Assembly (NCBI RefSeq): GCF_963921235.1
Contig: NC_086101.1
Coordinates: 28,830,001-28,894,000 of the forward strand
Direction of reading: 5' to 3'
Source: Mobula hypostoma
Taxonomy: Eukaryota
Length of the DNA stretch: 64,000 bases
A program made the translations under genes and the position numbers. Below, one piece after another: positions 1 through 64,000 of the stretch. The notes under the pieces were generated by a model, which saw only the letters and a program-made list of their open reading frames with translations, searched no databases and had not been told where the DNA came from. How positions within the stretch are numbered: position 1 is the stretch's first letter; each line of letters starts with the position of its first letter.

Positions 1-880
1 CTTGGATAGGTTAGGTGAGTGGGCAAATTCATGGAAGATGCAATTTAATGTGGATAAATGTGAAGTTATCCACTTTGGTGGCAAAAACAGGAAAACAGAT
101 TATTATCTGAATGGTGGCCGATTAGGAAAAGGAGAGGTGCAACAAGACCTGGGTGTCATTATACACCAGTCATTGAAAATGAGCATGTAGGTACAGCAGG
201 CGGTGCAAAAGGCGAATGGTATGCTGGCATTTATAGCGAGAGGATTTGAGTACAGGAGCAGGGAGGTACTACTGCAGTTGTACAATGCCTTGGTGAGACC
301 ACACCTGGAGTATTGTGTGCAGTTTTGGTCCCCTAATCTGAGGAAAGACATTCTTGCCATTGAGGGAGTACAAAGAAGGTTCACCAGATTGATTCCTGGA
401 ATGGCAGGACTTTCATATGATGAAAGACTGGATGAACTAGGCTTATACTCGTTGGAATTTAGAAGATTGAGGGGGAATCTGATTGAAATGTATAACATGC
501 TAAAGGGATTGGACAGGCTAGATGCAGGAAGATTGTTCCCGATGTTGGGGAAGTCCAGAACAAGGGGTCACAGTTTGAGGATAAAGGGGAAGCCTTTTAG
601 GACCGAGATGAGGAAAAACTTCTTCACATAGAGAGTGGTGAATCTGTGGAATTCTCTGCCACAGGAAACAGTTGAGGCCAGTTCATTGGCTATATTTAAG
701 ACGGAGTTAGATATGGCCCTGGTGGCTAAAGGGATCAGGGGGTATGGAGGGAAGGCTGGTGCAGGGTTCTGAGTTGGATGATCAGCCATGATCATACTGA
801 ATGGTGGTGCAGGCTCGAAGGGCCAAATGGCCTACTCCTGCACTTATTTTCAATGTTTCTATGTTTTCTATGTTTCTATG
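1..880 (+). mobile_element. CR1 LINE 3' fragment (RT C-terminus, 3' UTR, (TTTCTATG)n tail)
   Basis: ORFs 2..190 and 203..631 give CR1 ORF2 motifs (FNVDKCEVIHFG, RPHLEYCVQFWSP); the element ends in tttctatg repeats at ~855-880. Confidence 0.95.
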
Positions 881-1110
881 ACATCCTTATCTATTCCCAC
901 TCTCATCAGGACCACATCCAGCATGTCCAGAGAGTATTCAGATGCCTTCTTGAAAACGACCTGTATGCCAAGCCTGAAAAATGTGAATTCCATAAAGACC
1001 AGGTGTCATTTTTAGGCTATATACTTACCCCATCCAGTGTTCAAATGGACCCTAGTAAAGTTCAGGCTGTTGCAGAATGGCCCAAACCGTCTACAGTCAA
1101 ACAGGTACAG
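881..1110 (+). mobile_element. Ty3/Gypsy RT C-terminal fragment
   Basis: Translation HIQHVQRVFRCLLENDLYAKPEKCEFHKDQVSFLGY...DPSKVQAVAEWPKP is the typical post-YxDD Gypsy RT segment. Confidence 0.85.
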
Positions 1111-1164
1111 CCAACAGAAATGCAAGCACAGCTGAGAGCCATACAATTGCCCATGCTACACCTT

Positions 1165-1640
1165 TTTCTTGAAGGGAGGAGCCGAAGGAGAAGTTATTGA
1201 GAGTGAGGAACAGTTTCACTAGGTGGAGGAGAGTGGTGATGGAGGGGAGCTGGTTGGGTCTGGTGTCCAGAAAGAAATAGAGAAGTTGAGGCCATTCTAG
1301 TGGGATGTGGAGGTGTATAGGGTTGGACATCCATAGTGAAAATAAGATGATCAGGTCCCGTGAACTTGAAATTATTGAAAAGATCAAGAGGGTGTGAAGT
1401 GTCAAGGATGTAAGTGGTTAGGGACTGAATGGGGGGTTGGGGTGGGGGGGATAAAACTGAGTAGAGGACTGCAGATATACGTTCAGTGGAGCAGGAACTA
1501 GCAGAAACAATAGGTCTACCTGGACAGGCAGGGTTGTGGATCTTGGGCAGTTGGTAGAAATGGGTTGTACGGGTGCAGGAACTATGAGGTTGGTGGCAGT
1601 GGATGGGAGATCCCCAAAGTTAATAAGGTCGGTGATGGTG
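1165..1640 (-). mobile_element. Penelope-like element RT fragment
   Basis: Minus-strand FFLDTRPNQLPSITTLLHLVKLFLTLNNFSF matches the PLE RT at 60380-61312 (FFLDSRPNQFPSTTTLLRLAELVLTLNNFSF). Confidence 0.85.
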
Positions 1641-1879
1641 TGGGAGACTGTTGACAATCTTCTGAGACTCTGGAGTGGGGGACTCTACTACAATAATTGA
1701 TGGGCTCTCTCAGTGTACCTGGACACTCCCTGTCCAGTAGCAGAAGAACCCTATTCTGTGATCATTCCCTAACCAGCCCTGTTTCATGAAGTATGACTGA
1801 ATCAACGGGTCAGGCCACAGCTGTGGAGGGATCTGGACAGTGGATGTTTTGTGTCAACACTGCATTTCATAGGAAAAAA

Positions 1880-4800
1880 ACCATAGAAAATCGGTACAGA
1901 AGTCGGTCATTCAGCCCTTCGAGCCTGCACCGCCATTCAGTATAATCATGGCTGATCATCCAGGTCAGAAACCTGCACCTGCTTTCTCTCCATACCCCCG
2001 ATCCCTTTAGCCACAAGGGCCATATCTAACTCCCTCTTAAATATAGCCAATGAACGGGCCTCAACTGTTTACTGTGGCAGAGAATTCCACAGATTCACCA
2101 CTCTCTGCGTGAAGAAGTTTTTCCTAATCTCGATCCTAAAAGGCGTCCCCTTGATCCTTAAACTGTGACCCCTCATTCTGGACTTCCCCAACATCGGGAA
2201 CAATCTTCCTGCATCTAGCCTGTCCAATACCTTTAGAATTTTATACATTTCAATCAGATCCCCCCTCAATCTTCTAAATTCCAGCGAGTATAAGCCTAGT
2301 CAATCCAGTCTTTCTTCTTATGAAAGTCCTGCCATCCCAGGAATCAACCTGGTGAACCTTCTTTTTACTCCCTCTATGGCAAGAATGTCTTTCCTCAGAT
2401 TAGGGGACCAAAACTGCACACAATACTCCAGGTGTGGTGTCACCAAGGCCTTGTACAACTGCAGTAGAACCTCCCTGCTCCTGTAGTCGAATCCTCTTGC
2501 TATGAATGCCAACATACCATTCGCCTTTTTCACCACCTGCTGTACCTGCATGCCCACTTTCAATGACTGGTGTACAATGACACCCAGGTCTCGTTGCACC
2601 TCCCCTTTTCCTAATCGGCCACCATTCAGATAATAATCTGTTTTCCTGTTTTTGCCACCAAAGTGGATAACCTCACATTTATCCACATTATATTGCATCT
2701 TCCATGAACTTGCCCACTCACCTAACCTATCCAAGTCACCCTGCATCTTCTTTGCATCCTCCTCACAGCTAACACTGCTGCCCAGCTTCGTGTCATCCGC
2801 AAACTTGAAGATGCTGCACTTAATTCCCTCATCTACATCATCAATATATATTGTAAACAACTGGGGTCCCAGCACTGAGCCTTGCGGTACCCCACTAGTC
2901 ACTGCCTGCCATTCTGAAAAGGTCCTGTTTATTCCCACTCTTTGCTTCCTGTCTGCCAACCAATTCTCTAACCACATCAATACCATACTCCCAATACAAT
3001 GTGCTTTAAGTCTGCACACTAATCTAATGTGTGGGATCTTGTCAAAAGCCTTTTGAAAATCCAAATATACCACATCCACTGGTTCTCCCCTATCCACTCT
3101 ACTAGTTACATCCTCAAAAAATTCTATAAGATTCGTCAGACACGATATTCCTTTCACAAATCCATGCTGACTTTGTTCGATGATTTCACCGCTTTCAAAA
3201 TGTGCTGTTATCACATCTTTGATAACTGACTCTAGCAGTTTCCCCACCACCAATTTTAGGCTAACTGGTCTATAATTCCCCGGTTTCTCTCTCCCTCCTT
3301 TTTTAAAAAGTGGGGTTACATTAGCCACCCTCCAATCCTCAGGAACTAGTCCAGAATCTAAAGAGTTTTGAAAAATTATCACTAATGCATACACTATTTC
3401 TTGGGCTACTTCCTTAAGCACTCTGGGATGCCTTCAATTTACCTAACACCACTTCCCTACTAACATGTATTTCCCTCAGTTCCTCCATCTCACTGGACCC
3501 TCAGTCCCCCACAATTTCTGGAAGATTATTTATGTCCTCATTAGTGAAGACAGAAGGAGAGTAGTTATTCAATTGGTCTGCCATGTCCTTGTTCCCATGA
3601 TCAATTCACCTGTTTCTGACTGTAAGGGACCTACATTTGTCTTAACCAATCTTTTTCTTTTCACATATCAATAAAAGCTTTTACAGTCAGTTTTTATGTT
3701 CCCTGCCAGCTTTCTCTCATAATCCTTTTTCCATTTCCTAATTAAGCCCTTTGTCCACCTCTGCTGGACTCTGAATTTCTCCCAGTCCTCAGGTGAGCCG
3801 CTTTCTCTGGCTAATTTGTACGTTTCTTCTTTGGATTTGATACTATCCCTAATTTCCTTTGTCAGCCACGGGTGCACTACCTTGCCTGGTTTATTCTTTT
3901 GCCAAACTGTGATGAACAATTGTTGTAGTTCATCCATGTGATCTTTAAATGCTTGCCATTGCATATCCACCGTCAACCCTTTAAGTATCATTTGCCAGTC
4001 CATCTTAGCTAATACACATCTCATGCCTTCAAAGTTACCCTTCTTTAAGTTCAGAACCTTTGTTTCTGAATTAACTATGTCACTCTCTATCTTAATGAAG
4101 AATTCTACCATACTATGGTCACTCTTAACCAAGGGGCCTCGCACGACAGGGTTGCTAACTAACCCTTCCTCATTGCTCAATACCCAGTCTAGAATGACCT
4201 GCCCTCTAGTTGGTTCCTCAACACGTTGGTTCAGAAAACCATCCCGCATGCATTCCAAGAAATCCTCTTCCTCAGCAACCTTACCAATTTGGTTCACCCC
4301 AATCTATATGTAGATTGAAGTCACCCATTATTACTTCTGTTCCTTTATTGCATGCATTTCTAATTCCCTGTTTAATGCCATCCCCAACCTCACTACTACT
4401 GTTAGGTAGCCTGTACACAACTCCCACCAGCGTTTTCTGCCCCTTAGTGTTATGCAGCTCTACCCATATCCATTTTGCATCCTCCAGGCTAATGTCCTTC
4501 CTTTCTATTGCGTTAATCTTCTCTCTAACCAGCAATGGTAGCCCACCTCCTTTTCTTTCAAGTCTATCCTTCCTGAACACTGAATATCCCTGGATGTTGA
4601 ACTCCCATCCTTGGTCACCCTGGAGCCATGCCTCTGTGATCCCAACTATATCATATTCATTAATAACTATCTGCACATTCAATTCATCCACCTTGTTACG
4701 AATGCTCCTTGCATTGACACACAAAGCCTTCAGGCTTGCTTTTACAACACTCATAGCCCTTATACAATTATGTTGAAAAGTGGCCCTTTTTGATTTTTGC

Positions 4801-5205
4801 CCTGGATTTGTCTGCCTGCCACTTTTACTTTTCACCTTACTACTTTTTGCTTCTACCGTCATTTTACACCCCTCTGTCTCACTGCACTTGTTCCCACCCC
4901 CCTGCCACATTAATTTAAATCCTCCTGAACAACAGTAGCAAAACACTCCCCCAGGACATGGGTTCCAGCCCAGTCCAGGTGCAGACCGTCCTGTTTGTAC
5001 CGGTCCCACCTCCCCCAGAGCTGGTTCCAATGCCCCAGAAATTTGAATCCCTCCCCCTTGCACCATTTTCAAGCCACGTATTCATCTGATATATCCTCCT
5101 ATTTCTACTCTGACTAGCACGTGGCACTGGTAGTAATCCAGAGATTATTACCTTTGTGGTCCCACTTTTTAGTTTATCTCCTGACTCCCTAAATTCACCT
5201 TGTAG
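1880..5205 (-). mobile_element. CR1 LINE, degenerate (ORF1 esterase end, APE endonuclease, RT, 3' tail)
   Basis: Minus ORFs 2318..3421 (RT: YRPVSL, FADD), 3668..4297, 4281..5072 (EN: CVNARSIRNK, MGDFN) and 4915..5316 (SGLLPVPRAS esterase-like). Confidence 0.95.
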
Positions 5206-5550
5206 GACCCCAGCGGAGCAGGCGACGTTGTAGCGGGCAACGGAGTAGAGGGAGACAGAGTAGGAAGGCTTTGTCTCGAGAGGCTTCAACGAGCAGAGGC
5301 TGAGGATGAGCTTCACTCCAAGTGAGGTAAGCCCAGGTAAGTTCCTTTAAAGGGAGAACGGTCTGCAGCAGTATTTTATTTGAAGTAAGGAAGGTGGTGA
5401 GGCTATAGCTCATTGGTGAGCCTAGCTAAGTGAGCTAGGGCAGTAGCAATAGTTGTTTTAAGAACTCCAAGGGAAAGAGTGGCACCACTGCGCAGACACG
5501 TGATGTCAGCCGGGTGAGCGCCGAGCGTTTTGAAAAAGAGGGCCTCCCTA

Positions 5551-5850
5551 TCCTCCTCTACTGGAAAGATAAAGCCACACTCAGGTTGGAGGAACAACAC
5601 CTTATATTCCATCTGGGTAGCCTCCAATCTGAGGGCATGAAGATTGACTTCTCAAACTTCCACTAATGCCCCACCTCCCCCTCGTACCCCATCTGTTATT
5701 TATTTATATACACACATTCTTTCTCTCTCTCTCCTTTTTGTTCCTTTGCCTATACCCCTTGCCCATCCTCTGGGTTTTTTCCCTCTCCCCCTTTTCCATC
5801 TCCCCGGGCCCCCTGTCCCATGATCCTCTCATATCCCTTTTGCCAATCAA
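5551..5850 (+). mobile_element. Penelope-like element 3' end (GIY-YIG C-terminus plus pyrimidine-rich tail)
   Basis: Sequence encodes ...KATLRLEEQHLIFHLGSLQSEGMKIDFSNF, near-identical to the end of ORF 60846..61739. Confidence 0.85.
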
Positions 5851-5917
5851 CTGTCCCGCTAACACTCACAACACGCTGGAGGAACTCAGCAGGTCGGGCA
5901 GCATCCGTGGAAAAGAT

Positions 5918-5956
5918 CAGTTCACGTTTCAGGCCGGAACTCTTCGTCAGGACTGT
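5918..5956 (-). ncRNA. Minimal hammerhead ribozyme motif (probably inactive, GUG at cleavage triplet)
   Basis: Reverse complement reads AGTC-CTGACGA-AGAGTTCCGGCCT-GAAA-CGTG-AACTG. Confidence 0.6.
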
Positions 5957-6727
5957 TTGGGGAAGGGGCAGAGGCCCTATAAAGAAGGTGGGGGGAGGGT
6001 GGGAAGGAGAAGGCTGGTAGGTTCCAGGTGAAAAACCAGTAAGGGGAAAGATAAAGGGGTGGGGGAAGGGAGGCAGGAAGGTGATAGGCAGGAAAGGTGA
6101 AGAAAGAATAGGGGAAAACACAATAGGTAGTAGAAGGAAGTGGAACCATGAGGGAGGTGGTAGGCAGCTGGGGGAGGGGGCAGAGTGACATAGGGATAGG
6201 GGAAGGGAGGGGGAGGGAACTACCGGAAGTTGGCGAATTCTATGTTCATACCAAGGGGCTGGAGACTACCTAGACAGTATATAAGGTGTTGCTCCTCCAA
6301 CCTGAGTTTAGCCTCATCATGGCAGTAGAGAAGGCCATGTATGGACATATCTGAATGGGAGTGGGAAGCAGAGTTGCAGTTGGTGGCTGTTGGGAGATCC
6401 TGTCTGTTTTGTGGGAAGGAGCAGAGGTGCTCGACGAAGCGGTCCCCAAATCTGCGTTGGGTTTCACTGATGTAGAGGAGGCCGCACCGGGAGAAGCAGA
6501 TGCAATAGATGACCCCAACATACTCATAAGTGAAGTGTTGTCTCACTTGGAAGTACTGTTTGGGGCCCTGAATGGTGGCAAGTGAGGAGGTGTAGGGACA
6601 GGTGTAGCACTTGCACTTACAGGTCCAGCTCTTGGCTCCACCCCTCACCCTCCTGTCTTCTCCTATCATTTTGGATCTCCCCCTCCCCCTGCCACTTTCA
6701 AATCTCCTACTAGCTCTTCCTTCAGTT

Positions 6728-6763
6728 AGTCCTGACAAAGGGTCTCGGCCTGAAACGTCGACT
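6728..6763 (+). ncRNA. Minimal hammerhead ribozyme motif (core mutated, CUGACAA)
   Basis: AGTC-CTGACAA-AGGGTCTCGGCCT-GAAA-CGTC-GACT; stem I AGTC/GACT. Confidence 0.6.
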
Positions 6764-6860
6764 GTATCTCTTCCTAGAGATGCTGCCTGGCCTGCTGCGT
6801 TCAGCAGCAACTCTGATGTGTGTTGCTTGAATTCCAGCATCTGCAGGATTCCTCGTGTTT

Positions 6861-7402
6861 GCGACCTCCCTATCCAGCGGGCAGCGGAGTGAGTGATATC
6901 AGAGTGAAAGGGATTTGGCTGATGTGAGCAGACGCTGAGGAGGAGCTTGCTCCCAGTGAGGCCCATACCACTCCCGAGGCAGTCGGCAATGTTCCACGTC
7001 CACATTTCAAAAGTTGAGGCAACGTAATGGGTAGGTCATGGCAGCTGTGATCGGCCCCGTGGTTGTTAATCCTGCAGCATGTGGGAAATCAGGGATACCT
7101 CCAGTGTCCCTGATGACTATGTGTGCAGGAAATGTGTCCAGCTGCAGCTTCTGGCAAACCGCATTGAGCGGCTGGAGCTGTGATTGGATTCATACCGGAG
7201 CATCCGCGATGCTGAGACAGTCGTGAATAGCACGTTCAGTGAGCTGGCCACACCGCAGGTAAAGGCTACACAGGCAGAAAGGGAATGGGTGGCCACTAGA
7301 CAGCGTAGCAGTAGGCAGGTAGTGCAGAAGTCCCCTTGGGTCATCTCCCTCCTAAACAGAAACAGTATACTGTTTTGGATATTGTTGGGGGAGATGTCTC
7401 AT
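6861..7402 (+). mobile_element. CR1 5' UTR and ORF1 N-terminal Zn-finger/coiled-coil fragment
   Basis: Reads ...MWEIRDTSSVPDDYVCRKCVQLQLLANRIERLEL..., then ORF 7184..7492 (SIRDAETVVNSTFSELATPQVK), typical of CR1 ORF1. Confidence 0.8.
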
Positions 7403-8049
7403 GACCTTCATTTCCCTTCACATCTGCTGCCTGGCCCGCCCAGTTCTTCCAGAAGTTTTGTTTTACCCAGTGACTGGAGAAGGTTGTTCTGAGCAGCTTC
7501 CCACGGGCTATTGGGAGGTTCCTGAAATTTACACTCGCCGAATTTGATGCAACACGACTGGAAGTGGTTTGGCTCCGCTCCCTCCCGCGATCTGCTGACA
7601 CTCCACTCCCCCCGCAGTCCATTTCTGTCGAAGGATTTTCAGTTACTGGCTGCACCTGCACCGACTGGCCGCGTCTGTGAATCTAACTCCACCCTCAGCA
7701 CTTCACTGACTAACGATCAGGGTTCAGTCGATGCGAGGAGTTGTCGCAATGGAGAGCTGGACCGGACCGGTATCGCTCCTTGTCACCGCGTTATCTCTCT
7801 GCTCTGTCGCGGGAGGCCAGGCAGGTGAGGCGAGGGTATGTGACGGCGATGGTCGGGGTTTGTGTCGGGAAATTCACCTTTAAATCTTTTGGACTTTCTG
7901 GCTGTCGCTCCATTAGACGGGAAGACGACCTCACCGCACTCCTGTGTTCTCATTTCACTCCTGTGAAATTTCTGGAGTCGATAAACTCGGGGCAAAATGA
8001 TACTTGAATAGGTTTCACAGGTGGATAGGAATTGTCGCCAATTCCCAGA

Positions 8050-8059
8050 GGAAAGTCCC
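8050..8059 (-). promoter_or_regulatory. Perfect NF-kappaB site (GGGACTTTCC on the minus strand)
   Basis: GGAAAGTCCC at 8050-8059, in a stretch not assignable to a repeat. Function is not shown. Confidence 0.4.
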
Positions 8060-10104: not shown

Positions 10105-10107
10105 TTG

Positions 10108-10117: not shown

Positions 10118-10175
10118 AGCCGCGGATTTCAATTCTGTCGGATACGGTGTAAATCGCCAGAGTTAAATAGAAGAG

Positions 10176-22068: not shown

Positions 22069-25000
22069 AGTAGGGTTCTCAGTAATACTAGACGGACAGT
22101 TAACTGTTAATTGCTTACTACCAAAGTGGCTTCTCTGAAGTGTTATACTAAAATGGCTTCTCGTACTGCTAACTGCTGAGCCGGGGGTTCTGTGTAACCG
22201 CATGTTTAGGTTATACTTAGTGATAATGGAAATGGTATTCATTTGTTAGCCAATGGAAGTCATGTTATGTTATCTTGTATGTGTGTGCTGAGTTGAGGAG
22301 CGCGGGCTTTTTCGGAAGGCGAGCAGAGAGGACAGACGTGCGGGGAACGGACAGCGGTTCCAGGACGGCAGATACCGGACCTCGTGGGTTCGGATGGTGG
22401 CCGGAGTCTCGTAAGGAAGTTGTGGATGGAACCGGAGGCGTGAGCTCCAACGTATTAAAACATTATATGCACTAGACATAGAAGCATAGAAACATAGAAA
22501 ATAGCTGCAGGAGTAGGCCATTCGGCCCTTCGAGCCTGCACCGCCATTTAATATGATCATGGCTGATCATCCAACTCAGAACCCTGCCCCAGCCTTCCCT
22601 CCATACCCCCTGATCCCCGTAGCCACAAGGGCCATATCTAAATCCCTCTTAAGTATAGCCAATGAACTGGCCTCAACTGTTTCCTGTGGCAGAGAATTCC
22701 ACAGATTCACCACTCTGTGTGAAGAAGTTTTTCCTAATCTTGGTGCTAAAAGGCTTCCCCTTTATACTCAAACTGTGACCCCTCGTTCTGGACTCCCCCA
22801 ACATCGGGAACAATCTTCCTGCATCGAGCCTGTCCAATCCCCTTAGGATTTTATACGTTTCAATCAGATCCCCCCTCAATCTTCTAAATTCCAACGAGTA
22901 CAAGCCCAGTTCATCCAGTCTTTCTTCATAATAAAGTCCTGCCATTCCAGGAATCAATCTGGTGAACCTTCTTTGTACTCCCTCTATGGCAAGGATGTCT
23001 TTCCTCAGATTAGGGGGCCAAAACTGCACACAATACTACAGGTGTGGTCTCACCAAGGCCTTGTACAACTGCAGTAGTACCTCCCTGCTCCTGTACTCGA
23101 ATCCTTTTGCTCTGAATGCCAGCATACCATTCGCCTTTTTCACCGCCTGCTGTACCTGCATGCCCACTTTCAATGATTGGTGTATAATGACAGCCAGGTC
23201 TCGTTGCACCTCCCCTTTTCCTAATCGGCCACCATTCAGATAATAATCTGTTTTCCTATTTTTGCCACCAAAGTGGATAACTTCACATTTATCCACATTA
23301 AATTGCATCTGCCATGAATTTGCCCACTCACCCAACCTATCCAAGTCACTCTGCATCCTCTTAGCATCCTCCTCACAGCTAACACTGCCACCCAGCTTCG
23401 TGTCATCCGCAAACTTGGAGATGCTGCATTTAATTCCCTCATCCAAGTCATTAATATATATTGTAAACAACTGGGGTCCCAGCACTGAGCCTTGCGGTAC
23501 CCCACTAGTCACCGCCTGCCATTCTGAAAAGGTCCCGTTTATTCCCACTCTTTGCTTCCTGTCTGCTAACCAATTCTCTATCCACATCAATACCTTACCC
23601 CCAATACCATGTGCTTTAAGTTTGCACACTAATCTCCTGTGTGGGACCTTGTCAAAAGCCTTTTGAAAATCTAAATATACCACATCCACTGGCTCTCCCC
23701 TATCCACTCTACTAGTTACATCCTCAAAAAATTCTATGAGATTCGTCAGACATGATTTTCCTTTCACAAATCCATGCTGACTTTGTCCGATGATTTCACT
23801 GCTTTCCAAATGTGCTGTTATCACATCTTTGATAACTGACTCCAGCAGTTTCCCCACCACCGATGTTAGGCTAACCGGTCTATAAATCCCTGGTTTCTCT
23901 CTCCCTCCTTTTTTAAAAAGTGGGGTTACATTAGCTACCCTCCAATCCTCAGGAACTAGTCCAGAATCTAACGAGTTTTGAAAAATTATCACTAATGCAT
24001 CCACTATTTCTTGGGCTACTTCCTTAAGCACTCTGGGATGCAGACCATCTGGCCCTGGGGATTTATCTGCCTTCAATCCCTTCAATTTACCTAACACCAC
24101 TTCCCTACTAACATGTATTTCACTCAGTTCCTCCATCTCACTGGACCCTCTGTCCCCTACTATTTCCAGAAGATTATTTATGTCCTCCTTAGTGAAGACA
24201 GAACCAAAGTAATTATTCAATTGGTCTGCCTTGTCCTTGCTCCCCATAATCAATTCACCTGTTTCTGTCTGTAGGGGACCTACATTTGTCTTTACCAGTC
24301 TTTTCCTTTTTACATATCTATAAAAGCTTTTACAGTCAGTTTTTATGTTTCCTGCCAGTTTTCTCTCATAATCTTTTTTCCCCTTCCTAATTGAGCCCTT
24401 TGTCCTCCTCTGCTGAACTCTGAATTTCTCCCAGTCCTCAGGTGAGCCACTTTTTCTGGCTAATTTGTATGCTTCTTCTTTGGAATTGATACTATCCCTA
24501 ATTTCTCTTGTCAGCCACGGGTGCACTACCTTCCTTGATTTATTCTTTTGCCAAACTGGGATGAACAATTGTTGTAGTTCATCCATGCAACCTTTAAATG
24601 CTTGCCATTGCATATCCACCGTCAATCCTTTAAGTGTCATTTGCCAGTCTATCTTAGCTAATTCACGTCTCATACCTTCAAAGTTACCCCCCTTTAAGTT
24701 CAGAACCTTTGTTTCTGAATTAACTATGTCACTCTCCATCTTAATGAAGAATTCCACCATATTATGGTCACTCTTACGCAAGGGGCCTCTCACGACAAGA
24801 TTGCTAATTATCCCTTCCTCATTGCTCAAAACCAAGTCCAGAATACCCTGCTCTCTAGTTTGTTCCTTGACATGTTGGTTCAAAAAACCATCCTGCATAC
24901 ATTCCAAGAAATCCTCTTCCTCAGCACCTTTACCAACTTGGTTCACCCAATCTACACATAGATTGAAGTCACCCATTATAACTGCTGTTCCTTTATTGCA

Positions 25001-25457
25001 CACATTTCTAATTTCCTGTTTAATACCATCTCTGACCTCACTACTACTGTTAGGTGGCCTGTACACAACTCCCACCAGCGTTTTCTGCCCCTTAGTGTTA
25101 CACAGCTCTACCCATATAGATTCCACATCTTCCCGGCTTATGTCCTTCCTTTCTATTGCATTAATCTCCTCTCTAACCAGCAACGCCACCCCACCTCCTT
25201 TTCTTTCATGACTGGTGTTAGACTGATAAGTTACTTATGTGGCGCCTTTTCTTTCAGTTGTTGCTACTAACCCATCACCAAAACTTGCTATGAAGCATAG
25301 TTCTTTACTCGCACTTGATATATTGTTTGATATTTGTGTCGTGGCTGATCATTGGGTGCCTCACACCGTATCCGCACCAAAGCATTTGCACTGTATGGCG
25401 GGGTCGATGGTTATTCACCCTAGGCAACGGGAGTCAGTTGGGGCAAAGGCCGTTATA
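22069..25457 (+). repeat. 3' LTR, split by a CR1 into 22069-22477 and 25213-25457
   Basis: The two halves match consecutive parts of the 5' LTR and end CCGTTATA followed by the TSD CACA. Confidence 0.9.
22478..25212 (-). mobile_element. CR1 LINE, 5'-truncated, long intact ORF2 segment
   Basis: ORF 23036..25189 (717 aa, partial EN plus RT with FADD) and 22673..23029; (CATAGAAA) tail. Confidence 0.95.
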
Positions 25458-42697: not shown

Positions 42698-42946
42698 GCT
42701 CACACAGCTTGATGTATTACTACTTCCAATCCATCAGCATTCCCGAAATGCCATCTTTCTTCGGGATTGGGATGCTCGATGACTTGCAGATAGACTACTA
42801 CGACAACACACTCCATGAAGTAGAAGTCAAGTACCAGTGGATCGCAGATGGCTTATCGACCGACTACCGGAAAGAACAGAAAGAAATAGCCGATCAGCTT
42901 CATGAGCTCCTCTCGACATATCTGAAGCCACTCACCTCATTGATTA
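42698..42946 (+). CDS. MHC class I-like alpha1 domain exon
   Basis: Pyrimidine tract plus CAG acceptor, GTGAGT donor, 249 nt, phase 1-1. SHSLMYYYFQSISIPEMPSFFGIGMLDDLQIDYYDN...QWIADGLSTDY matches the class I alpha1 pattern (GSHSLxY, GxxDD, W, DY). Confidence 0.93.
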
Positions 42947-44337: not shown

Positions 44338-46320
44338 AACATAGAAACATAGAAACATAGAAAATAGGTGCAGGAGTAGGCCATTCGGCCCTTCGAGCCT
44401 GCACCGCCATTCAGTATGATCATGGCTGATCATCCAACTCAGAACCCTGTACCAGCCTTCCCCCCATACCCCCTGATCCCTTTAGCCACAAAGCCATATC
44501 TAACTCCCTGTTAAGTATAGCCAATGAACTGGCCTCAACTGTTTCCTGTGGTAGAGAATTCCACAGATTCACCACTCTCTGTGTTTTGCCTAATCTCGGT
44601 CCTAAAAGGCTTCCCTTTATCCTTAAACTGTGACCCCTCGTTCTGGACTTCCCCAACATCGGGAACAATCTTCCTGCATCTAGCCTGTCCAATCCCTTTA
44701 GTATTTTATATGTTTCAATAAGATCCCCCCTCAATCTTCTAAATTCCAATGAGTATAAGCCTAGTCGATCCAGTCTTTCATCATATGAAAGTCCTGCCAT
44801 CCCAGGAATCAATCTGGTGAACCTTCTTTCTACTCCCTCTATGGCAAGGATGTCTTTCCTCAGATTAGGGGACCAAAACTGCACACAATACTACAGGTGT
44901 GGTCTCACCGAGGCCTTGTACAACTGCAGTAGTACCTCCCTGCTCCTGTACTCGAATCCTTTTGCTGTGAATGCCAGCATACCATTCGCCTTTTTCACTG
45001 CCTGCTGTACCTGCATGCCCACTTTCAATGACTGGTGTATAATGACACCCAGGTCTCATTGCACCTCCCCTTTTCCTAATCGGCCACCATTCAGATAATA
45101 ATCTGTTTTCCTGTTTTTGCCACCAAAGTGGATAACCTCACATTTATCCACATTAAATTGCATCTGCCATGAATTTTCCCACTCACCTAACCTATCCAAG
45201 TCACCCTGCATCCTCTTAGCATCCTCCTCACAGCTAACACTGCCACCCAGCTTTGTGTCATCCACAAACTTGGAGATGCTGCATTTAATTCCCTCATCTA
45301 AGTCATTAATATATATATTGTAAACAACTGGGGTCCCAGCACTGAGCCTTGCGGTACCCCACTAGTCACTGCCTGCCATTCTGAAAAGGCCCCGTTTATT
45401 CCTGCTCTTTGCTTCCTGTCTGCCAACCAACTCTATCCACATCAATACCTTACTCCCAATACCATGAGCTTTAAGTTTGCACACTAATCTCCTGTGTGGG
45501 ACCTTGTCAAAAGCCTTTTGAATATCCAAATATACCACATCCACTGGTTCTCCCCTATCCACTCTACTAGTTACATCCTCAAAAAATTCTATGAGATTCG
45601 TCAGACATGATTTTCCTTTCACAAATCCATGCTGACTTTGTCCGATAATTTCACCGCTTTCCAAATGTGCTGTTATCACATCTTTGATAACTGACTCTAG
45701 CATTTTCCCCACCACCGATGTCAGGCTAACCGGTCTATTATTCCACGGTTTCTCTCTCCCTCCTTTTTTAAAAAGTGGGGTTACATTAGCCACCCTCCAA
45801 TCCTCAGGAACTAGTCCAGAATCTAAAGAGTTTTGAAAAATTATCGCTAATGCATCCACTATTACTTGTGCAACTTCCTTAAGCACTCTGGGATGCAGAC
45901 CATCTGGCCCTGAGGATTTATCGGCCTTTAATCCCTTCAATTAACCGAACACCACTTCCCTACTAACATGCATTTCCCTCAGTTCCTCCATCTCACTGGA
46001 CCCTCTGTCCCCTACTATTTCCGGAAGATTATTTATGTCCTCCTTAGTGAAGACAGAACCAAAGTAGTTATTCAATTGGTCTGCCACGTCCTTGCTCCCC
46101 ATAATCAATTCACCTGTTTCTGTCTGTAGGGGACCTACATTTCTCTTAACCAATCTTTTTCTTTTCACATATCTATAAAAGCTTTTTCAGTTAGTTTTTA
46201 TGTTCCCTGCCAGTTTTCTCTCATAATCTTTTTTCCCCTTCCTAATTAAGCCCTTTGTCCTCCTCTGCTGGACTCTGAATTTCTCCCAGTCCTCAGCTGA
46301 GCCACTTTTTCTGGCTAATT
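44338..46320 (-). mobile_element. Intronic CR1 LINE (RT to 3' tail)
   Basis: ORFs 44420..44884, 45056..45265, 45362..45940 and 45941..46168; (CATAGAAA) tail. Confidence 0.93.
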
Positions 46321-46789: not shown

Positions 46790-47050
46790 ACCTCAGCTAC
46801 ATACAGGCACTCTGGGGCTGCACGCAATCTGGAAATATGGCCAATGAGATTCTAAAAATCAACGTCCCGGAAATCGGAGAGTTCAGCTGTGATTTGAACA
46901 CATTGAAATGCTCTGGTGCTCTTTTCCCAGCAATGCTCAATGATCAATTGAGCCAACTCAGTTTCACTGACATGTCTGCATTGAAGACGAACTGCATTCA
47001 GTACTTGCAATGGGCTGTTCAGCTTGGAAGAGAAGCATTGGAAAGGCAAG
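46790..47050 (+). CDS. MHC class I-like alpha2 domain exon (GC donor)
   Basis: TTTACAG acceptor, AG|GCAAGT donor, 261 nt, phase 1-1. YIQALWGC...LKTNCIQYLQWAVQLGREALERQ matches the alpha2 pattern (Q..YGC; C..WL..YL..G...L.R). Confidence 0.9.
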
Positions 47051-54720: not shown

Positions 54721-55434
54721 ATACTCACATCTCACACACAGTATGAGACACTGCCCCTGGAGTCATTCTCACTACACTATGATGCCCTAACAGACAAGGA
54801 ATGGACAATTAAGAACAAAAATACCCCTGCTTGGATGTTTGATATCCTCTGTGTTGCTAGCTCACTTTTTGCTGTTTGTGCAATCTGTTCTCTCCCTGCA
54901 TCTTGCGTGTTTGATGTTTTCTTTGAACGGGTTCCTTGGTGCCTCTTTGTTCCTTCACTGCATCGGAGGATAAACCTCAGAGTTGTATTCTGTATAAACA
55001 CTTTGGAAATTAATCTACTTTGAATCTTTGAGTGAGGCCGCTCCCAAATGGAGACATTGACTGATCTCCCGGTCTGGGGCAGTGAGGGACCTTCTGATCA
55101 ATACTGCTGTGCTGAGGGCATTCTCCATCTTGCAGTTTGAGGATGATCTGAATTTGGGATATTGCACGACTGCTGGACTGGGAATAGTGCCTGTGACCTT
55201 GATCTGGACCTGTCCGATGAATGAACGTAATCTCTGTCTGTAGTCTGCATGAGCTTGGGCTGGGGAGGCTGATTTCAGATTAGATGGTGAGTGTAATAGT
55301 GAGGCAGATCAGGTTCTGAGGCCGTGAAGGATGTGAGAGTAATCCCAACATTGAACACTGTAACTTCAGTCTGTAACGGTAAGGTAACATCAGCCTGTGT
55401 TGAGGTGGTGACATAATTTTTGATTCTTCCCCAG

Positions 55435-55701
55435 TTTCTCCAAAGACTCAGGTGTTGACAAGGAGGCCAACAGCTACTGAAGGCGAGAGTCTGTCGTGCA
55501 TCATCACTCCCTTCTACCCCCGTGCTATCAATGCCACTTGGCTGAAGAATGGGCAGGTTGTCTCTGAGGGCTACAAGGTGACTGTGCTACCAAACTACAA
55601 TGATACATACTGGATGGAACTCGTCATTGAGCTGCAGGGCAACGACCCGAACATCTATGCTTGTCATGTCGAGCACAGCACCCTGCCAAAGGCGAAGGGA
55701 G
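55435..55701 (+). CDS. MHC class I-like alpha3 (Ig C1-set) exon
   Basis: TTCTTCCCCAG acceptor, G|GTAGGT donor (alternative G|GTACAG at 55717), phase 1-1. VSPKTQV...LSCIITPFYPRAINATWLKNG...YACHVEHSTLP. Confidence 0.93.
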
Positions 55702-57979: not shown

Positions 57980-58096
57980 GAGTTGGTGAGCCCCATGGTG
58001 CAGGTCCTATGTTGGGGCTGATGACTGTGTTTGCAATAATCTTTGGAGTGATGTAGAGGTGCAGCAAGGAGAGAACCAAGGCATCACTGGAGGTGG
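57980..58096 (+). CDS. Connecting peptide/TM exon with in-frame TAG (58054-58056)
   Basis: CAG acceptor, phase 1: GVGEPHGAGPMLGLMTVFAIIFGVM*RCSKERTKASLEV, donor G|GTAAAC at 58097. Confidence 0.7.
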
Positions 58097-58182
58097 GTAA
58101 ACGTACAGATGCCTTTGTTAAACCTGTTTGCTGTGACAGTATTAGACTGTACATTCAATCTCCTCTCTTTTCTCCTTTGCAG

Positions 58183-58217
58183 ATCAGCATTTGGCTCTAA
58201 GTCAAGCACAGTTCTGA
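58183..58217 (+). CDS. Putative cytoplasmic-tail/terminal exon (DQHLALSQAQF*)
   Basis: Strong pyrimidine tract plus TTTGCAG acceptor after an 86-nt intron. It is translated only if the upstream TAG is absent. Confidence 0.55.
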
Positions 58218-58614
58218 ACACAGGGTGCAGCTTCAAACACGTTTTTTTGATGAGTGACCGCACATCTCAGCAAGCTTAGTCAGAATCAGGATCAGATTTA
58301 ATATCACTGGCATAGATCGTGAGATTTATTAACTTTATGGCAGCAGTACAATGAAATTGACAATAAATAAAAAACTGAGTTACATAAAGTATATTTATGG
58401 CTGTTAAGTTAAAATAAGTAGTGCAAAATAACAGAAATAAAAGAAGTAGGAAGTAGTGTTCATGGGTTCAATGTCCATTGATAAATCGGCTGGCAGAGGG
58501 GAAGAAGCTGTGCCTTCAGGCTTCTGTGCCTCCTTCCTGATGAGCTCCAGATGGGAAGAGGGCATGTCCTGGGTGGTGGTGGATGTAGCCTTCCTAAGGC
58601 ATCGCTCCTTGAAG

Positions 58615-58814
58615 NNNNNNNNNNNNNNNNNNNNNNNNNNNNNNNNNNNNNNNNNNNNNNNNNNNNNNNNNNNNNNNNNNNNNNNNNNNNNNNNNNNNNN
58701 NNNNNNNNNNNNNNNNNNNNNNNNNNNNNNNNNNNNNNNNNNNNNNNNNNNNNNNNNNNNNNNNNNNNNNNNNNNNNNNNNNNNNNNNNNNNNNNNNNNN
58801 NNNNNNNNNNNNNN
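58615..58814. other. Assembly gap (200 N)
   Basis: Run of exactly 200 N; the next contig begins GATC. Confidence 0.99.
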
Positions 58815-61800
58815 GATCCCAGGTACTCACATTTTATTGACTCTGCCTCTCGCCGCTTCTCCCGTCAAGCTCTGAAGGCGACGCTCTCCGCCATGAGGAG
58901 GTACTTGGTGTCCCTATCCCAGACCCTTCCACACCTTCGGGACACTTTCTTCGCCGTCTGTAATGGTCCTACCCGTTATTTCATCCTCCGTCGGATACAC
59001 GCCTGCAATCGCCGTTTTTTTGACTTTGTCATGTTACATAGAAACATAGAAAATAGGTGCAGGAGTAGGCCATTCGGCCCTTCGAGCCTGCACCGCCATT
59101 TATTATGATCATGGCTGATCATCCAACTCAGGCAAAGATCGCAAGATCCTACATCTACGGACTCCAGAGCCTGCCGGCCCCGACGCTAGCAGGCATGAAT
59201 TTCAGATTGCGGGCTCTGCCATTGATCTCGGCGGCTCCAACACCTCAGGGCATATTCAAAACCCGGACTCCAGCAACGACCAGGGACCACATTCGAAGTG
59301 ATTGCGCAACCACCAACTGCGACTCCAGCCTTGAACTCCAGGCCGGGTCTTTATGTGCTGCTATTGTGACTCCCGTCTCCCCTTCCCCCACCACCACTCC
59401 GCAGCCCCGTCTTCCTCAGATCCCACCGTCAACTCCTGGGCCCTCAGAGGCTCCATCTACCTCTCACCCCAACCCTCCCCTCTCCACTGACACCACCAGC
59501 CTCCCCCTCCCCCCTCTGATCCCAGCTCTCATCTGTGCCGGGTCTTTACCATCCCCTCCGACCTTCAACTGTCGGAGGCAGAACGCTCTGTCCTCAGTAA
59601 GGGCCTCGCGTTTGTCCCCCTTCGCCCACACCTCAGCGAGTTCCGTGTTCGCCATGATGCGGAACTTTTCTTTCCGCCGTCTCCGTCTCCGAGCCTACTT
59701 CTTTGGCAAGGACTCTTCCACCCCCACCGATGACCCCTTCTCCCTGTCTTCAACCCTCCTCTTCTTCATGGACACCCCGCTCTGGTCTTCTGCCTGCTCT
59801 GGATCTCTTTATTGCTGACTGCCGACGGGACATCAACCGTCTCGAGCTTCACCGCACCTTGTCCCCATTCCAACCTCACTCCTTCGGAACGCTCTGTACT
59901 CTCCACTCCCTCCGCGGTGACTAATCCTAACCTTTATTATTAAACCCGCCGATAACGGGGGTGCTGTTGTAGTCTGGCGTACTGACCTCTACCTTGCCGA
60001 GGCACAGCGACAACTCGCCGATACCTCCTCTTATTTACCCCTCGATCGTGACCCCACTAAGGAGCACCAGGCCATTGTCTCCCACACCATCACCGACTTT
60101 ATCCGCTCAGGTGATCTCCCATCCACTGCTACCAACCTTATAGTTCCCACACCCCGCACTTCCCGTTTCTACCTCCTACCCAAGATCCACAAACCTGTCT
60201 GTCCTGGCCGACCTATTGTCTCAGCTTACTCCTGCCCCACCGAACTCATTTCTGCATACCTCGACACTGTTTTATCACCCCTTGTTCAATCCCTTCCGAC
60301 CTATGTTCGTGACACTTCTCACGCTCTTAAACTTTTCGATGATTTTAAGTTCCCTGGCCCCCACCGCTTTATTTTCACCATGGATGTCCAGTCCTTATAT
60401 ACTTCCATCCCCCACCAGGAAGGTCTCAAAGCTCTACGCTTCTTTTTGGATTCCAGACCTAATCAGTTCCCCTCTACCACCACTCTGCTCCGTCTAGCGG
60501 AATTAGTCCTTACTCTTAATAATTTCTCCTTTGGTTCCTCCCACTTCCTCCAAACTAAAGGTGTAGCTATGGGCACCCGTATGGGTCCTAGCTATGCCTG
60601 CCTTTTTGTTGGGTTTGTGGAACAATCTATGTTCCGTGCCTATTCTGCTATCTGTCCCCCACTTTTCCTTCGCTACATCGACGACTGCATTGGCGCTGCT
60701 TCCTGCACGCATGCAGAACTCGTTGACTTTATTAACTTTGCCTCCAACTTTCACCCTGCCCTCAAGTTTACCTGGTCCATTTCTGACACCTGTCTCCCCT
60801 TTCTAGATCTTTCTGTCTCTGTCTCTGGAGACAGCTTATCCACTGATGTCTACTATAAGCCTACTGACTCTCACAGCTATCTGGACTATTCCTCTTCTCA
60901 CCCTGTCTCTTGCAAAAACGCCATCCCCTTCTCGCAATTCCTCCATTTCCACCGCATCTGCTCTCAGGATGAGGCTTTTCATTCTTGGACGAGGGAGATG
61001 TCTTCCTTTTTTAAAGAAAGGGGCTTCCCTTCCTCCACTATCAACTCTGCTCTTAAACGCATCTCCCCCATTTCACGTACATCTGCTCTCACTCCATCCT
61101 CCCGCCACCCCACTAGGAATAGGGTTCCCCTGGTCCTCACCTACCACCCCACCAGCCTCCGGGTCCAACATATTATTCTCCGTAACATACGCCACCTCCA
61201 ACGGGATCGCACCACTAAGCACATCTTTCCCACCCCCCCCTCTGCATTCCACAAGGATCGCTCTCTACACAACTCCCTTGTCCATTCGTTCCCCCCCATC
61301 CCTCCCCACTGATCTCCCTCCTGGCACTTATCCGTGTAAGCAGAACAAGTGCTACACATGCCCTTACACTTCCTCCCTTACCACCATTCAGGGCTCCAAA
61401 CAGTCCTTCCAGGTGAGGCATCACTTCACCTGTGAGTCGACTGGGGTGATATACTGTGTCCGGTGCTCCCGATGTGGCCTTTTATATATTGGCAAGACCC
61501 GACGCAGACTGGGAGACCGCTTTGCTGAACATCTACGCTCTGTCCGCCAGAGAAAGCAGGATCTCCCAGCGGTCACACATTTTAATTCCACATCCCATTC
61601 CCATTCTGACATGTCTATCCACGGCCTCCTCTACTGTAAAGATGAAGCCACACTCAGGTTGGAGGAACAACACCTTATATTCCGTCTGGGTAGCCTCCAA
61701 CCTGATGGCATGAACATTGACTTCTCTAACTTCCGCTAAGGCCCCACCTCCCCCTTGTACCCCATCTGTTACTCATTTTTATGCACATATTCTTTCTCTC

Positions 61801-62171
61801 ACTCTCCTTTTTCTCCCTCTGTCCCTCTGAATATACCTCTTGCCCATCCTCTGGGTCAACCTCCCCCCTCCTTGTCTTTCTTCCCGGACCTCCTGTCCCA
61901 TGATCCTCTCGTATCCCCTTTTGCCTATCACCTGTCCAGCTCTCGGCTCTATCCCTCCCCCTCCTGTCTTCTCCTATCATTTTGGATCTCCCCCTCCCCC
62001 TCCAACTTTCAAATCCCTTACTCACTCTTCCTTCAGTTTGTCCTGACGAAGGGTCTCGGCCTGAAACGTCGACTGCACCTCTTCCTACAGATGCTGCTTG
62101 GCCTGCTGTGTTCACCAGCAACTTTGATGTATGTTACTTGAATTTCCAGCATCTGCAGAATTCCTGTTGTT
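58815..62171 (+). mobile_element. Penelope-like element (RT plus GIY-YIG endonuclease), near full length, frameshifted; ~95-bp CR1 tail inserted at ~59036-59130
   Basis: RT 60380..61312 (MDVQSLYTSIP, GVAMGTRMGP, RYIDD), linker CKQNKCYTC, GIY-YIG VIYCVRCSRCGLLYIGKT...RFAEH (60846..61739), pLTR tail. Confidence 0.93.
62040..62073 (+). ncRNA. Minimal type I hammerhead ribozyme with intact catalytic core
   Basis: GTC-CTGACGA-AGGGTCTCGGCCT-GAAA-CGTC-GAC: CUGANGA, stem II AGG/CCU, GAAA, palindromic ACGU in place of stem III, GUC cleavage triplet (after 62070), stem I GUC/GAC. Confidence 0.75.
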
Positions 62172-64000
62172 TAGGGAACATAAAAACTGACTGTAAAAGC
62201 TTTTATAGATATGTAAAAAGGAAAAGACTGGTAAAGAAAAATGTAGGTCCCCTACAGACAGAAACAGGTGAATTGATTCTGGGGAGCAAGGACGTGGCAG
62301 ACCAATTGAATAATTACTTTGGTGCTGTCTTCACTAAGGAGGACATAAATAATCTTCCAGAAATAGTAGGGGACAGAGGGTCCAGTGAGATGGAGGAACT
62401 GAGGGAAATTCATGTTAGTAGGGAAGTGGTGTTAGGTAAATTGAAGGATATGGTCTGCATCCCAGAGTGCTTAAGGAAGTAGCCCAAGAAATAGTGGATG
62501 CATTAGTGATAATTTTTCAAAACTCGTTAGATTATGGACTAGTTCCTGAGGATTGGAGGGTGGTTAATGTAACCCCATTTTTTAAAAAAGGAGGGAGAGA
62601 GAAACCAGGAATTATAGACCAGTTAGCCTAACATCAGTGGTGGGGAAACTGCTAGAGTCAGTTATCAAAGATGTGATAACAGCACATTTTGAAAGCGGTG
62701 AAATCATCGAACAAAGTCAGCATGGATTTGTGAAAGGAAAATCATGTCTGACGAATCTCATAGAATTTTTTGAGGATGTAACTAGTAGAGTGGATGGGGA
62801 GAACCAGTGGATGTGGTATATTTGGATTTTCAAAAGGCTTTTGATAAAGTCCCGCACAGGAGATCAGTGTGCAAACTTAAAGCACACAGTATTGGGGGTA
62901 AGGTATTGATGTGGATAGAGAATTGGTTGGCAGGCAGGAAGCAAAGAGTTGGAATAAACGGGACCTTTTCAGAATGGCAGGCAGTGACTAGTAGGGTACC
63001 GCAAGGCTCAGTGCTGGGACCCCAGTTGTTTACAATATATATTAATGACTTGGATGAGGGAATTAAATGCAGCATCTCCAAGTCTGCGGATGACACGAAG
63101 CTGGGCGGCAGTGTTAGCTGTGAGGAGGATGCTAAGAGGATGCAGGGTGACTTGGATAGGTTAGGTGAGTGGGCAAATTCATGGAAGATGCAATTTAATG
63201 TGGATAAATGTGAAGTTATCCACTTTGGTGGCAAAAACAGGAAAACAGATTATTATCTGAATGGTGGCCGATTAGGAAAAGGAGAGGTGCAACAAGACCT
63301 GGGTGTCATTATACACCAGTCATTGAAAATGAGCATGTAGGTACAGCAGGCGGTGCAAAAGGCGAATGGTATGCTGGCATTTATAGCGAGAGGATTTGAG
63401 TACAGGAGCAGGGAGGTACTACTGCAGTTGTACAAGGCCTTGGTGAGACCACACCTGGAGTATTGTGTGCAGTTTTGGTCCCCTAATCTGAGGAAAGACA
63501 TTCTTGCCATTGAGGGAGTACAAAGAAGGTTCACCAGATTGATTCCTGGAATGGCAGGACTTTCATATGATGAAAGACTGGATGAACTAGGCTTATACTC
63601 GTTGGAATTTAGAAGATTGAGGGGGAATCTGATTGAAATGTATAACATGCTAAAGGGATTGGACAGGCTAGATGCAGGAAGATTGTTCCCGATGTTGGGG
63701 AAGTCCAGAACAAGGGGTCACAGTTTGAGGATAAAGGGGAAGCCTTTTAGGACCGAGATGAGGAAAAACTTCTTCACATAGAGAGTGGTGAATCTGTGGA
63801 ATTCTCTGCCACAGGAAACAGTTGAGGCCAGTTCATTGGCTATATTTAAGACGGAGTTAGATATGGCCCTGGTGGCTAAAGGGATCAGGGGGTATGGAGG
63901 GAAGGCTGGTGCAGGGTTCTGAGTTGGATGATCAGCCATGATCATACTGAATGGTGGTGCAGGCTCGAAGGGCCAAATGGCCTACTCCTGCACTTATTTT
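62172..64000 (+). mobile_element. CR1 ORF2 RT to 3' end, 5'-truncated
   Basis: ORFs 61982..62482 (C-terminal half), 62637..62909, 62807..63340 and 63353..63781. Confidence 0.95.

What the first reader, a model, noticed from the sequence alone, without database searches (positions are those of the whole stretch)
1..64000. Window start recurs at window end: ~63.15 kb repeat unit enclosing the whole MHC-I-like gene
Seen: 1-850 matches 63151-64000, and I found one difference (T286 vs G63436). Both copies share private lesions that the other CR1 copies here lack, e.g. GAAAATGAGCATGTAG and GAAATGTATAACATG. Other same-subfamily copies differ visibly. Inference: this is not independent retrotransposition but a very recent tandem segmental duplication whose unit contains leader through terminal exon, i.e. 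a birth-and-death array of this class I-like gene. The alternative is a haplotypic or assembly duplication across the gap at 58615.
Basis: partly seen in the sequence, partly recalled or inferred. Interest (0 to 1): 0.7.

Follow-up and report, generated by a model that had tools for sequence, protein, structure and literature searches.

The report
Repeated front end of ray MHC-like gene
The start of this devil-ray window does recur at its end, as a DNA-level copy and not two jumps of a mobile element, but the next gene 63 kb on is a different relative (83% alike), so only the front part was copied recently, or two parental versions were stacked by the assembly.

Summary
Observation confirmed: window 1-850 equals 63151-64000 at 849/850. 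Both stretches lie in same-strand CR1-like LINE copies. Three other copies of that subfamily here are only 92-94% alike.

The pair shares 20 private substitutions, two of them stop codons. So it arose by DNA copying of a decayed element, not by two retrotranspositions.

The window's gene is intact and already in RefSeq (Mobula hypostoma XP_062903552.1, leader at 7731, 35-kb first intron, stop at 58056). It is encoded at one place only.

An earlier scan note puts the next class I-like gene 6,899 bases beyond the window end. That is exactly 63,150 bases from this gene's second ATG, so the repeat most likely runs at least 7.75 kb, to the leader exon.

By my inference that neighbour is XP_062903553.1. 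It is 83% identical overall (leader 100%, alpha1 73%) and 95% identical to a gene on an unplaced 516-kb scaffold.

So there is no very recent whole-gene twin. There is a shared 5' module heading two different genes.

Whether both modules lie on one chromosome (about 40%) or are two haplotypes stacked across the gap at 58615 (about 42%) could not be settled. DNA beyond the window was not retrievable, and the one reads call had no power.

The scan noted a similar start-recurs pattern in another window (s1-144957).

The parts
1..880 (+). CR1-like LINE 3' part, copy A, cut by the window start. Its (TTTCTATG)-type tail ends at 880. It carries the derived T at 286.
   Evidence: unique-flank contigs of runs X1 and X2 start at 882
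62173..64000 (+). CR1-like LINE, copy B, 5'-truncated at 62173 and cut by the window end. It is a dead copy: a 25-bp deletion after 62447, 1-bp deletions at 62607 and 62795, and in-frame stops at 63338 and 63779. It has the ancestral G at 63436.
881..7730 (+). Flank between copy A and the leader exon (transposon debris, including the minus-strand CR1 at 1887-3704). I infer that it recurs without net length change at 64001-70880.
   Evidence: the place of s1-141814 lies exactly 63,150 bases from the ATG at 7749; not seen directly
7731..7824 (+). Leader exon of the class I-like gene (Met at 7731, second Met at 7749, GT donor after 7824).
42698..42946 (+). Alpha1 exon.
   Evidence: the spliced model equals P0129 exactly
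46790..47050 (+). Alpha2 exon.
55435..55701 (+). Alpha3 (C1-set Ig) exon.
57980..58056 (+). Connecting and transmembrane exon ending in TAG. This is the family's normal tail-less stop.
58615..58814 (.). Assembly gap (200 N), 558 bp after the stop codon and outside the coding sequence. It lies between the first gene and the second copy of the upstream module. Continuity across it is not shown.
58815..62172 (+). Sequence from the gap to copy B (transposon fragments). It would be the far-upstream part of the second unit. Its counterpart would lie before window position 1, so it is untestable here.

Best explanation
The 850-bp match is the visible edge of a longer, same-orientation DNA-level repeat with a period of exactly 63,150 bp. 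It is not two CR1 insertions. The repeat carries the upstream region and leader exon of the class I-like gene (CD1-like, UFA/UGA-type). It runs at least from 63151 to about 70899, which is 7.75 kb or more, and perhaps through much of the 35-kb first intron. The first copy heads the window's gene (P0129). The second copy most likely heads the neighbouring gene, which I infer to be P0133. The alpha1-to-TM part of P0133 is of another paralogue type: 83% identical to P0129 and 95% to P0002 on an unplaced scaffold. So what recurs is a 5' module shared by two different genes, and the neighbour looks like a hybrid made by non-allelic recombination in a tandem array. It is not a freshly born twin gene. 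Shown here: the match, its shared lesions, the gene model, the single place of P0129 and the protein mosaic. Inferred: that the identity continues from 850 to the leader, that the neighbour is P0133, and that it is a hybrid. Open: whether both modules stand on one chromosome (about 0.40) or are the two haplotypes of one structurally heterozygous locus stacked across the gap at 58615 (about 0.42). The confidence given is for the core claim only.
For: The match is 849/850, against 92-94% for the other copies. The pair shares 20 private substitutions in 850 bp, including two nonsense changes. That equals the private load of independent copies, and copy B also has frameshifting deletions. Such a pattern points to copying after decay. 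The spliced model from the window equals RefSeq P0129, and its coding span of 50,326 bp equals 7731-58056. Earlier finding s1-141814 is a complete class I-like gene that starts 6,899 letters beyond the window end, at 70899, which is 7749 + 63150 to the base. P0133 has the next accession number, lies on the same 199-Mb chromosome and spans 49,524 bp, against the 49,027 letters noted. P0133 against P0129: leader 100%, alpha1 73%, alpha2 74%, alpha3 91%, TM 96%. P0133 against P0002: alpha1 99%, overall 95%. P0129 is encoded at one place, and no other M. hypostoma member sits in its 90% cluster or in the family search.
Against: No base beyond 64000 or before position 1 was seen, because DNA of the NCBI records could not be fetched. 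The extension of the identity rests on one coordinate taken from an earlier AI note, and on assuming that its reader began at the second ATG. That the neighbour is P0133 is inferred from accession order, chromosome and span, not from coordinates; the noted span is about 480 bp shorter than the RefSeq span. The leader identity covers only 31 residues. The reads call had no power: contigs of 60-180 bp break at 881/882 because CR1 words are about 10,000 times over-represented.
Confidence: 0.8

Rival explanations
1. Sub-reading B of the core claim: haplotype stacking, a false heterotype duplication. One haplotype carries gene 1 (P0129) followed by a short gene (P0002). The other carries a single recombinant gene with gene 1's 5' module and a P0002-type 3' part (P0133). 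The contig ending at 58614 comes from the first haplotype and the contig starting at 58815 from the second. The rest of the first haplotype was left as the unplaced 516-kb scaffold. In that case the 5' module exists once per haplotype, and T286/G63436 is a heterozygous site.
For: A gap lies exactly between the two copies. Gaps between copies are a listed mark of false duplications, and divergent haplotypes are their main source (PMC9516828). An unplaced scaffold holds allele-like partners of chromosome genes: P0002 against P0133 at 95%, and P0018 against P0135 at about 90% in shared exons. A hybrid gene of this form needs only one unequal crossover (deletion product). In manta the orthologue of gene 1 is followed by a short gene, as in the proposed first haplotype. 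One difference in 850 bp fits ordinary heterozygosity.
Against: No depth baseline, spanning read or haplotype-specific word count was obtained. Curated HiFi assemblies keep few false duplications. The model needs an extra contig break 558 bp after the gene. A word depth of about 55 for the unique flank in single runs X1 and X2 would be high for single-copy sequence, though no baseline is known.
Confidence: 0.42
2. Sub-reading A of the core claim: a real partial duplication on one chromosome. Two neighbouring paralogues stand in tandem, and the 5' module of one has been copied in front of the other within roughly the last million years. The route would be a whole-unit duplication followed by a fusion deletion, or a very long conversion tract. 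The assembler broke at the near-identical repeat.
For: The family is a real tandem array, with six consecutive RefSeq proteins on one manta chromosome and both long (47.5-50.4 kb) and short (18.5-19.1 kb) genes. Recent segmental duplications are common in immune gene clusters and cause contig breaks. RefSeq models both genes on the same chromosome with consecutive accessions.
Against: From a 'long gene, short gene' ancestor, the arrangement 'gene 1, then gene 1's 5' module on another gene's body' needs at least two recent events. HiFi assemblers usually resolve repeats that differ about once per kilobase, so the gap is not expected from the repeat alone. No read evidence was obtained.
Confidence: 0.4
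3. One reading: a very recent tandem duplication of the whole 63-kb unit, giving a near-identical twin gene one unit downstream.
For: The match is 99.88% identical with shared lesions. A class I-like gene of similar span follows at the same period.
Against: P0129 is encoded at a single place. No other M. hypostoma protein lies in its cluster or in the family hit list. The inferred neighbour P0133 differs at 17% of residues, and at 26-27% in alpha1 and alpha2.
Confidence: 0.03
4. The identity is confined to the CR1 element. Either two retrocopies came from one dead source element, or gene conversion occurred between two old CR1 copies. The 63,150-bp agreement with the neighbour's start would then be an accident.
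For: The CR1 family is hugely abundant: word depth is 2x10^5 to 10^6, against about 55 in the flank. Young copies are noted elsewhere in this genome. Contigs break at 881/882.
Against: The source element would carry two stops within these 850 bp, and both copies would have landed 63 kb apart in the same orientation. The neighbour's start matches the period to the base. The contig break at 882 is expected from repeat words alone.
Confidence: 0.05

Closest known systems
Tandem arrays of MHC class I and class I-like genes evolving by birth-and-death and unequal crossing-over (established knowledge)
   Same: Same-orientation paralogues at a regular spacing on one chromosome. Copy number and gene size differ between manta and devil ray. 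Exons show mosaic similarity between paralogues.
   Different: The near-identical part is not a whole gene. It is an upstream and leader module, while the ligand-binding exons of the two genes differ by about a quarter of residues.
False heterotype duplications in vertebrate assemblies (Ko et al. 2022, PMC9516828)
   Same: Two copies lie side by side on one scaffold with an assembly gap between them, in a locus type with divergent haplotypes. A related unplaced scaffold exists.
   Different: The two 'copies' end in different gene bodies, so a plain allele pair is not enough; a structural heterozygote would be needed.
Fusion (Lepore-type) genes made by non-allelic homologous recombination between tandem paralogues (established knowledge)
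   Same: The neighbour combines the 5' part of one paralogue with the body of another.
   Different: The recombination point was not seen, and the partner products were not identified.
UFA/UGA CD1-like non-classical class I lineages of sharks and rays (PMC10751288, PMC12562908)
   Same: Leader-alpha1-alpha2-alpha3-TM build. The best solved relative is chain 8gm8_A, described as 'MHC class I protein' (E 7.6e-62). An earlier follow-up (s1-142239) filed what I take to be the 80%-identical P0002 under UFA.
   Different: The literature calls these genes single- or low-copy. Mobula has an array of at least six in manta and at least three in devil ray. Lineage assignment by phylogeny was not done here.

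Membership tests
Recent whole-unit tandem segmental duplication | Two same-orientation copies far more alike than family background | tested here: met
   849/850 against 92-94% for the other copies
Recent whole-unit tandem segmental duplication | Identity continues beyond the transposon into unique flank | tested here: inconclusive
   Indirect only: the neighbour gene's start lies exactly one period from the ATG at 7749. No flank sequence was seen.
Recent whole-unit tandem segmental duplication | The second unit holds a near-identical copy of the whole gene | tested here: not met
   P0129 is encoded at one place. The inferred neighbour P0133 is 83% identical. No twin appears.
Recent whole-unit tandem segmental duplication | Doubled read depth and reads spanning the junction | not testable with these tools
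   Only k=31 contigs of 60-180 bp were available, there is no depth baseline, and only one reads call was allowed.
False heterotype (haplotypic) duplication | Assembly gap between the two copies on one scaffold | tested here: met
   The gap at 58615-58814 lies between gene 1 and the second module; criterion from PMC9516828.
False heterotype (haplotypic) duplication | Half-diploid read depth and single-copy haplotype-specific k-mers on each copy | not testable with these tools
   contig word depth only, with no single-copy reference region
CR1-like LINE copies | Reverse-transcriptase reading frame and a short-repeat 3' tail shared with other copies | tested here: met
   Reading frames; alignment to three other copies including the tail
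UFA/UGA-type CD1-like MHC class Ib | Class I heavy-chain domain order with a C1-set alpha3 domain | tested here: met
   The five-exon model equals P0129. PF00129 and PF07654 are on record. Best solved match is 8gm8_A.
UFA/UGA-type CD1-like MHC class Ib | Placement inside the named lineage by phylogeny with reference UFA/UGA sequences | not tested
   No named reference sequence was at hand. The UFA label comes from an earlier follow-up (s1-142239) and from papers.

The most novel reading that the evidence does not exclude
The duplication is real and lies on one chromosome. Within roughly the last million years a module of at least 8 kb, possibly about 47 kb, was copied in front of a different CD1-like class I gene. 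The module holds the promoter region, the leader exon and the giant first intron. Two genes with different ligand-binding domains would then share one regulatory front end. This would sit inside a Mobula-specific expansion of a lineage that the literature describes as single- or low-copy.
Probability: 0.38. Interest if true: 0.45.

Novelty: new member of a known kind. Interest (0 to 1): 0.3.

Why it matters
If real, this is a clean and datable case of regulatory-module exchange between neighbouring lipid-presenting-type MHC genes in a ray. It would add to evidence that this lineage is expanded in Mobula, although papers call it single- or low-copy. If it is haplotype stacking, the public M. 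hypostoma chromosome overstates the locus by about one 5' module. In that case XP_062903552 and XP_062903553 would sit on different haplotypes, and the 516-kb unplaced scaffold would belong at the gap. That matters for anyone counting MHC genes in this assembly. Either way it is ordinary genome structure, not a new kind of element.

Tried and rejected
1. Fetching DNA beyond the window through annotated proteins. P0001, P0002, P0129, P0133, P0003, P0004, P0005 and P0135 all returned 'no DNA: the sample's file is too large'. Only gene spans and neighbours within 10 kb were obtained.

2. Reads. Reads were laid on 1-2400 at 98% likeness, to see whether contigs cross the CR1/flank border at 880. 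The runs hold only k=31 contigs of 60-180 bp. X1 and X2 show ONT adapter ends, and X4 and X6 show GATC ligation joints. The contigs break at 882 because CR1 words are about 10,000 times over-represented, so this neither supports nor refutes anything. No row showed T or G at 286. As a result the gap at 58615 could not be tested with reads.

3. Gap continuity from the window itself. Neither flank of the gap belongs to a repeat with another copy here that could show whether the two sides continue each other. No reading frame crosses the gap, because the coding sequence ends at 58056.

4. Representative-library search with the alpha1 frame. It gave only the family's 50% cluster representative and was of no help for the locus.

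5. No leader-like sequence occurs anywhere but 7731-7824.

6. Synonymous against non-synonymous counts of the shared CR1 changes: 11 synonymous, 15 non-synonymous and 2 stops. This is too noisy against a three-copy consensus to decide alone.

A paper search for 8GM8 found nothing relevant.

Full report
OBSERVATION

Window 1-850 and 63151-64000 are identical at 849 of 850 positions. The one difference is T286 against G63436. The only run of N is 58615-58814.

Both stretches are the 3' parts of + strand CR1-like LINE copies. Copy A is cut by the window start, and its short-repeat tail ends at 880. Copy B begins, 5'-truncated, at 62173 and is cut by the window end.

Three more copies of the same subfamily lie on the minus strand (1887-3704, 22498-24353, 44361-46208). 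Over the same columns they are 92.7-93.8% identical to A and B, and 91.7-93.4% to each other. G at 63436 is the ancestral state, shared by B and all three other copies, so T286 is a change in copy A.

RETROTRANSPOSITION OR DNA COPYING

- A and B share 20 substitutions against the unanimous other three copies in 850 bp. Each of those three copies has 24-33 private changes.
- The shared set includes two C-to-T changes that turn Gln codons into stops (63338, 63779) and 15 other amino-acid changes.
- Upstream of the overlap, copy B also has a 25-bp deletion after 62447 and two 1-bp deletions.

So the pair carries a normal load of post-insertion decay and shares all of it. That is what copying of an already dead element as DNA gives. 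Two retrocopies would need a source with stops in its own reading frame, and both would have had to land 63 kb apart in the same orientation. I give the CR1-limited reading about 5%.

THE GENE

Family proteins found with the alpha3 frame map five exons on the + strand:

| Exon | Coordinates |
|---|---|
| Leader | 7731-7824 |
| Alpha1 | 42698-42946 |
| Alpha2 | 46790-47050 |
| Alpha3 | 55435-55701 |
| TM, ending in TAG | 57980-58056 |

- The spliced translation is identical to P0129, which is XP_062903552.1 of Mobula hypostoma, on a 199-Mb chromosome.
- The coding span on record, 50,326 bp, equals 7731-58056.
- So the gene is intact and already annotated. Its first intron is 35 kb long, and no leader-like sequence lies next to alpha1.
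- The stop after the TM helix is the normal end in the eleven relatives inspected.
- The gap lies 558 bp after the stop. No reading frame crosses it.
- Continuity across the gap could not be shown.

BEYOND THE WINDOW

DNA of the NCBI records could not be fetched. The single reads call had no power. The runs hold contigs of only 60-180 bp, and these break at 882 because CR1 words are about 10,000 times over-represented.

Three indirect results bear on the question.

1. P0129 is encoded at one place only. Its 90% cluster and the family search hold no second M. hypostoma protein like it. So no annotated near-identical twin exists.

2. An earlier finding of this scan, s1-141814, is a complete class I-like gene of 49,027 letters. 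It starts 6,899 letters beyond my window's end, at 70899. That is 7749 + 63150 to the base, and 7749 is the second ATG of my leader exon. I therefore infer that the repeat continues without net length change from 850 to the leader, at least 7.75 kb. I could not read that sequence.

3. The protein with the next accession number on the same chromosome is P0133 (XP_062903553.1), with a span of 49,524 bp. I take it to be that neighbour.

| Domain | P0133 vs P0129 | P0133 vs P0002 |
|---|---|---|
| Leader | 100% | 97% |
| Alpha1 | 73% | 99% |
| Alpha2 | 74% | 92% |
| Alpha3 | 91% | 96% |
| TM | 96% | 92% |
| Overall | 83% | 95% |

P0002 is a 16.7-kb gene on an unplaced 516-kb scaffold.

WHAT IT MOST LIKELY IS

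It is a 5' module (upstream region, leader exon and probably much of intron 1) present twice at about 99.9% identity. The two copies head two different gene bodies. The neighbour looks like a hybrid: the front of gene 1 on a P0002-type body. This is the kind of product that non-allelic recombination makes in tandem arrays.

It is not a freshly duplicated whole gene. The array itself is old. In manta the orthologue of gene 1 is P0001 (90% identical, span 50,372 bp). It sits in a run of six consecutive family accessions, with both long genes (47.5 and 50.4 kb) and short genes (18.5 and 19.1 kb).

REAL OR STACKED

I could not decide between these two readings.

For stacking of two haplotypes:
- The gap lies exactly between the copies. 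That is a listed mark of false duplications, whose main source is divergent haplotypes (PMC9516828).
- An unplaced scaffold carries allele-like partners of chromosome genes: P0002 against P0133, and P0018 against P0135.
- A hybrid of this form is the one-step deletion product of an unequal crossover in a 'long gene, short gene' arrangement such as manta has.
- One difference in 850 bp fits heterozygosity.

For a real duplication on one chromosome:
- Such arrays do duplicate.
- Curated HiFi assemblies keep few false duplications.
- RefSeq places both genes on the chromosome.
- It would, however, need two recent events.

I put stacking at about 0.42 and a real duplication at about 0.40. Read depth and spanning reads of the assembled individual would settle it.

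COMPARISON AND NOVELTY

The closest solved chain is 8gm8_A (E 7.6e-62). Papers describe CD1-like UFA and UGA genes of sharks and rays as single- or low-copy. An earlier follow-up (s1-142239) filed what I take to be P0002 under UFA. I did not test lineage membership.

The structure is a known kind: a segmental repeat or fusion gene in an MHC class I array, or a known kind of assembly error. Interest is modest.

Noticed in passing
window 7731-58056: The class I-like gene has a 35-kb first intron full of transposons between the leader and alpha1. RefSeq (XP_062903552.1) and the manta orthologue (span 50,372 bp) share this build, while other family members span only 17-19 kb.
   Followed up: partly
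outside the window: manta XP_072113434 to XP_072113441; devil ray XP_062903552-5, XP_062905767, XP_062894931-2: This CD1-like family is an array of about six genes in manta and at least three to four in devil ray, although reviews call UFA/UGA single- or low-copy in sharks and rays.
   Followed up: partly
window 23039-25234 (minus strand): The CR1 copy at 22498 to about 25500 keeps an open frame of 732 residues through its reverse-transcriptase part, so this subfamily may still have nearly intact members.
   Followed up: no
window 58815: The first letters after the gap are GATC, the cutting site seen as ligation joints in the Hi-C runs X4 and X6. This may be chance (1 in 256).
   Followed up: no
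runs X1, X2 laid on window 1-2400: Loose ends carry an ONT adapter sequence, so the best DNA holders are nanopore runs. Their unique-flank contigs (882-1934) match the window without a single difference, at a word depth of about 47-65.
   Followed up: no
window 847, runs X1 and X2: One contig matches copy A up to 847 and then runs on for 255 letters into a different tail and flank. It is a third, very similar CR1 copy elsewhere in the genome. It is not copy B, which agrees with A through 850.
   Followed up: no
another piece of the genome (s1-144957): A second window of this genome was noted with its start recurring 62,855 bp later around an ICAM-like gene. It is worth checking together with this one for a common cause, whether real arrays or assembly overlaps.
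   Followed up: no
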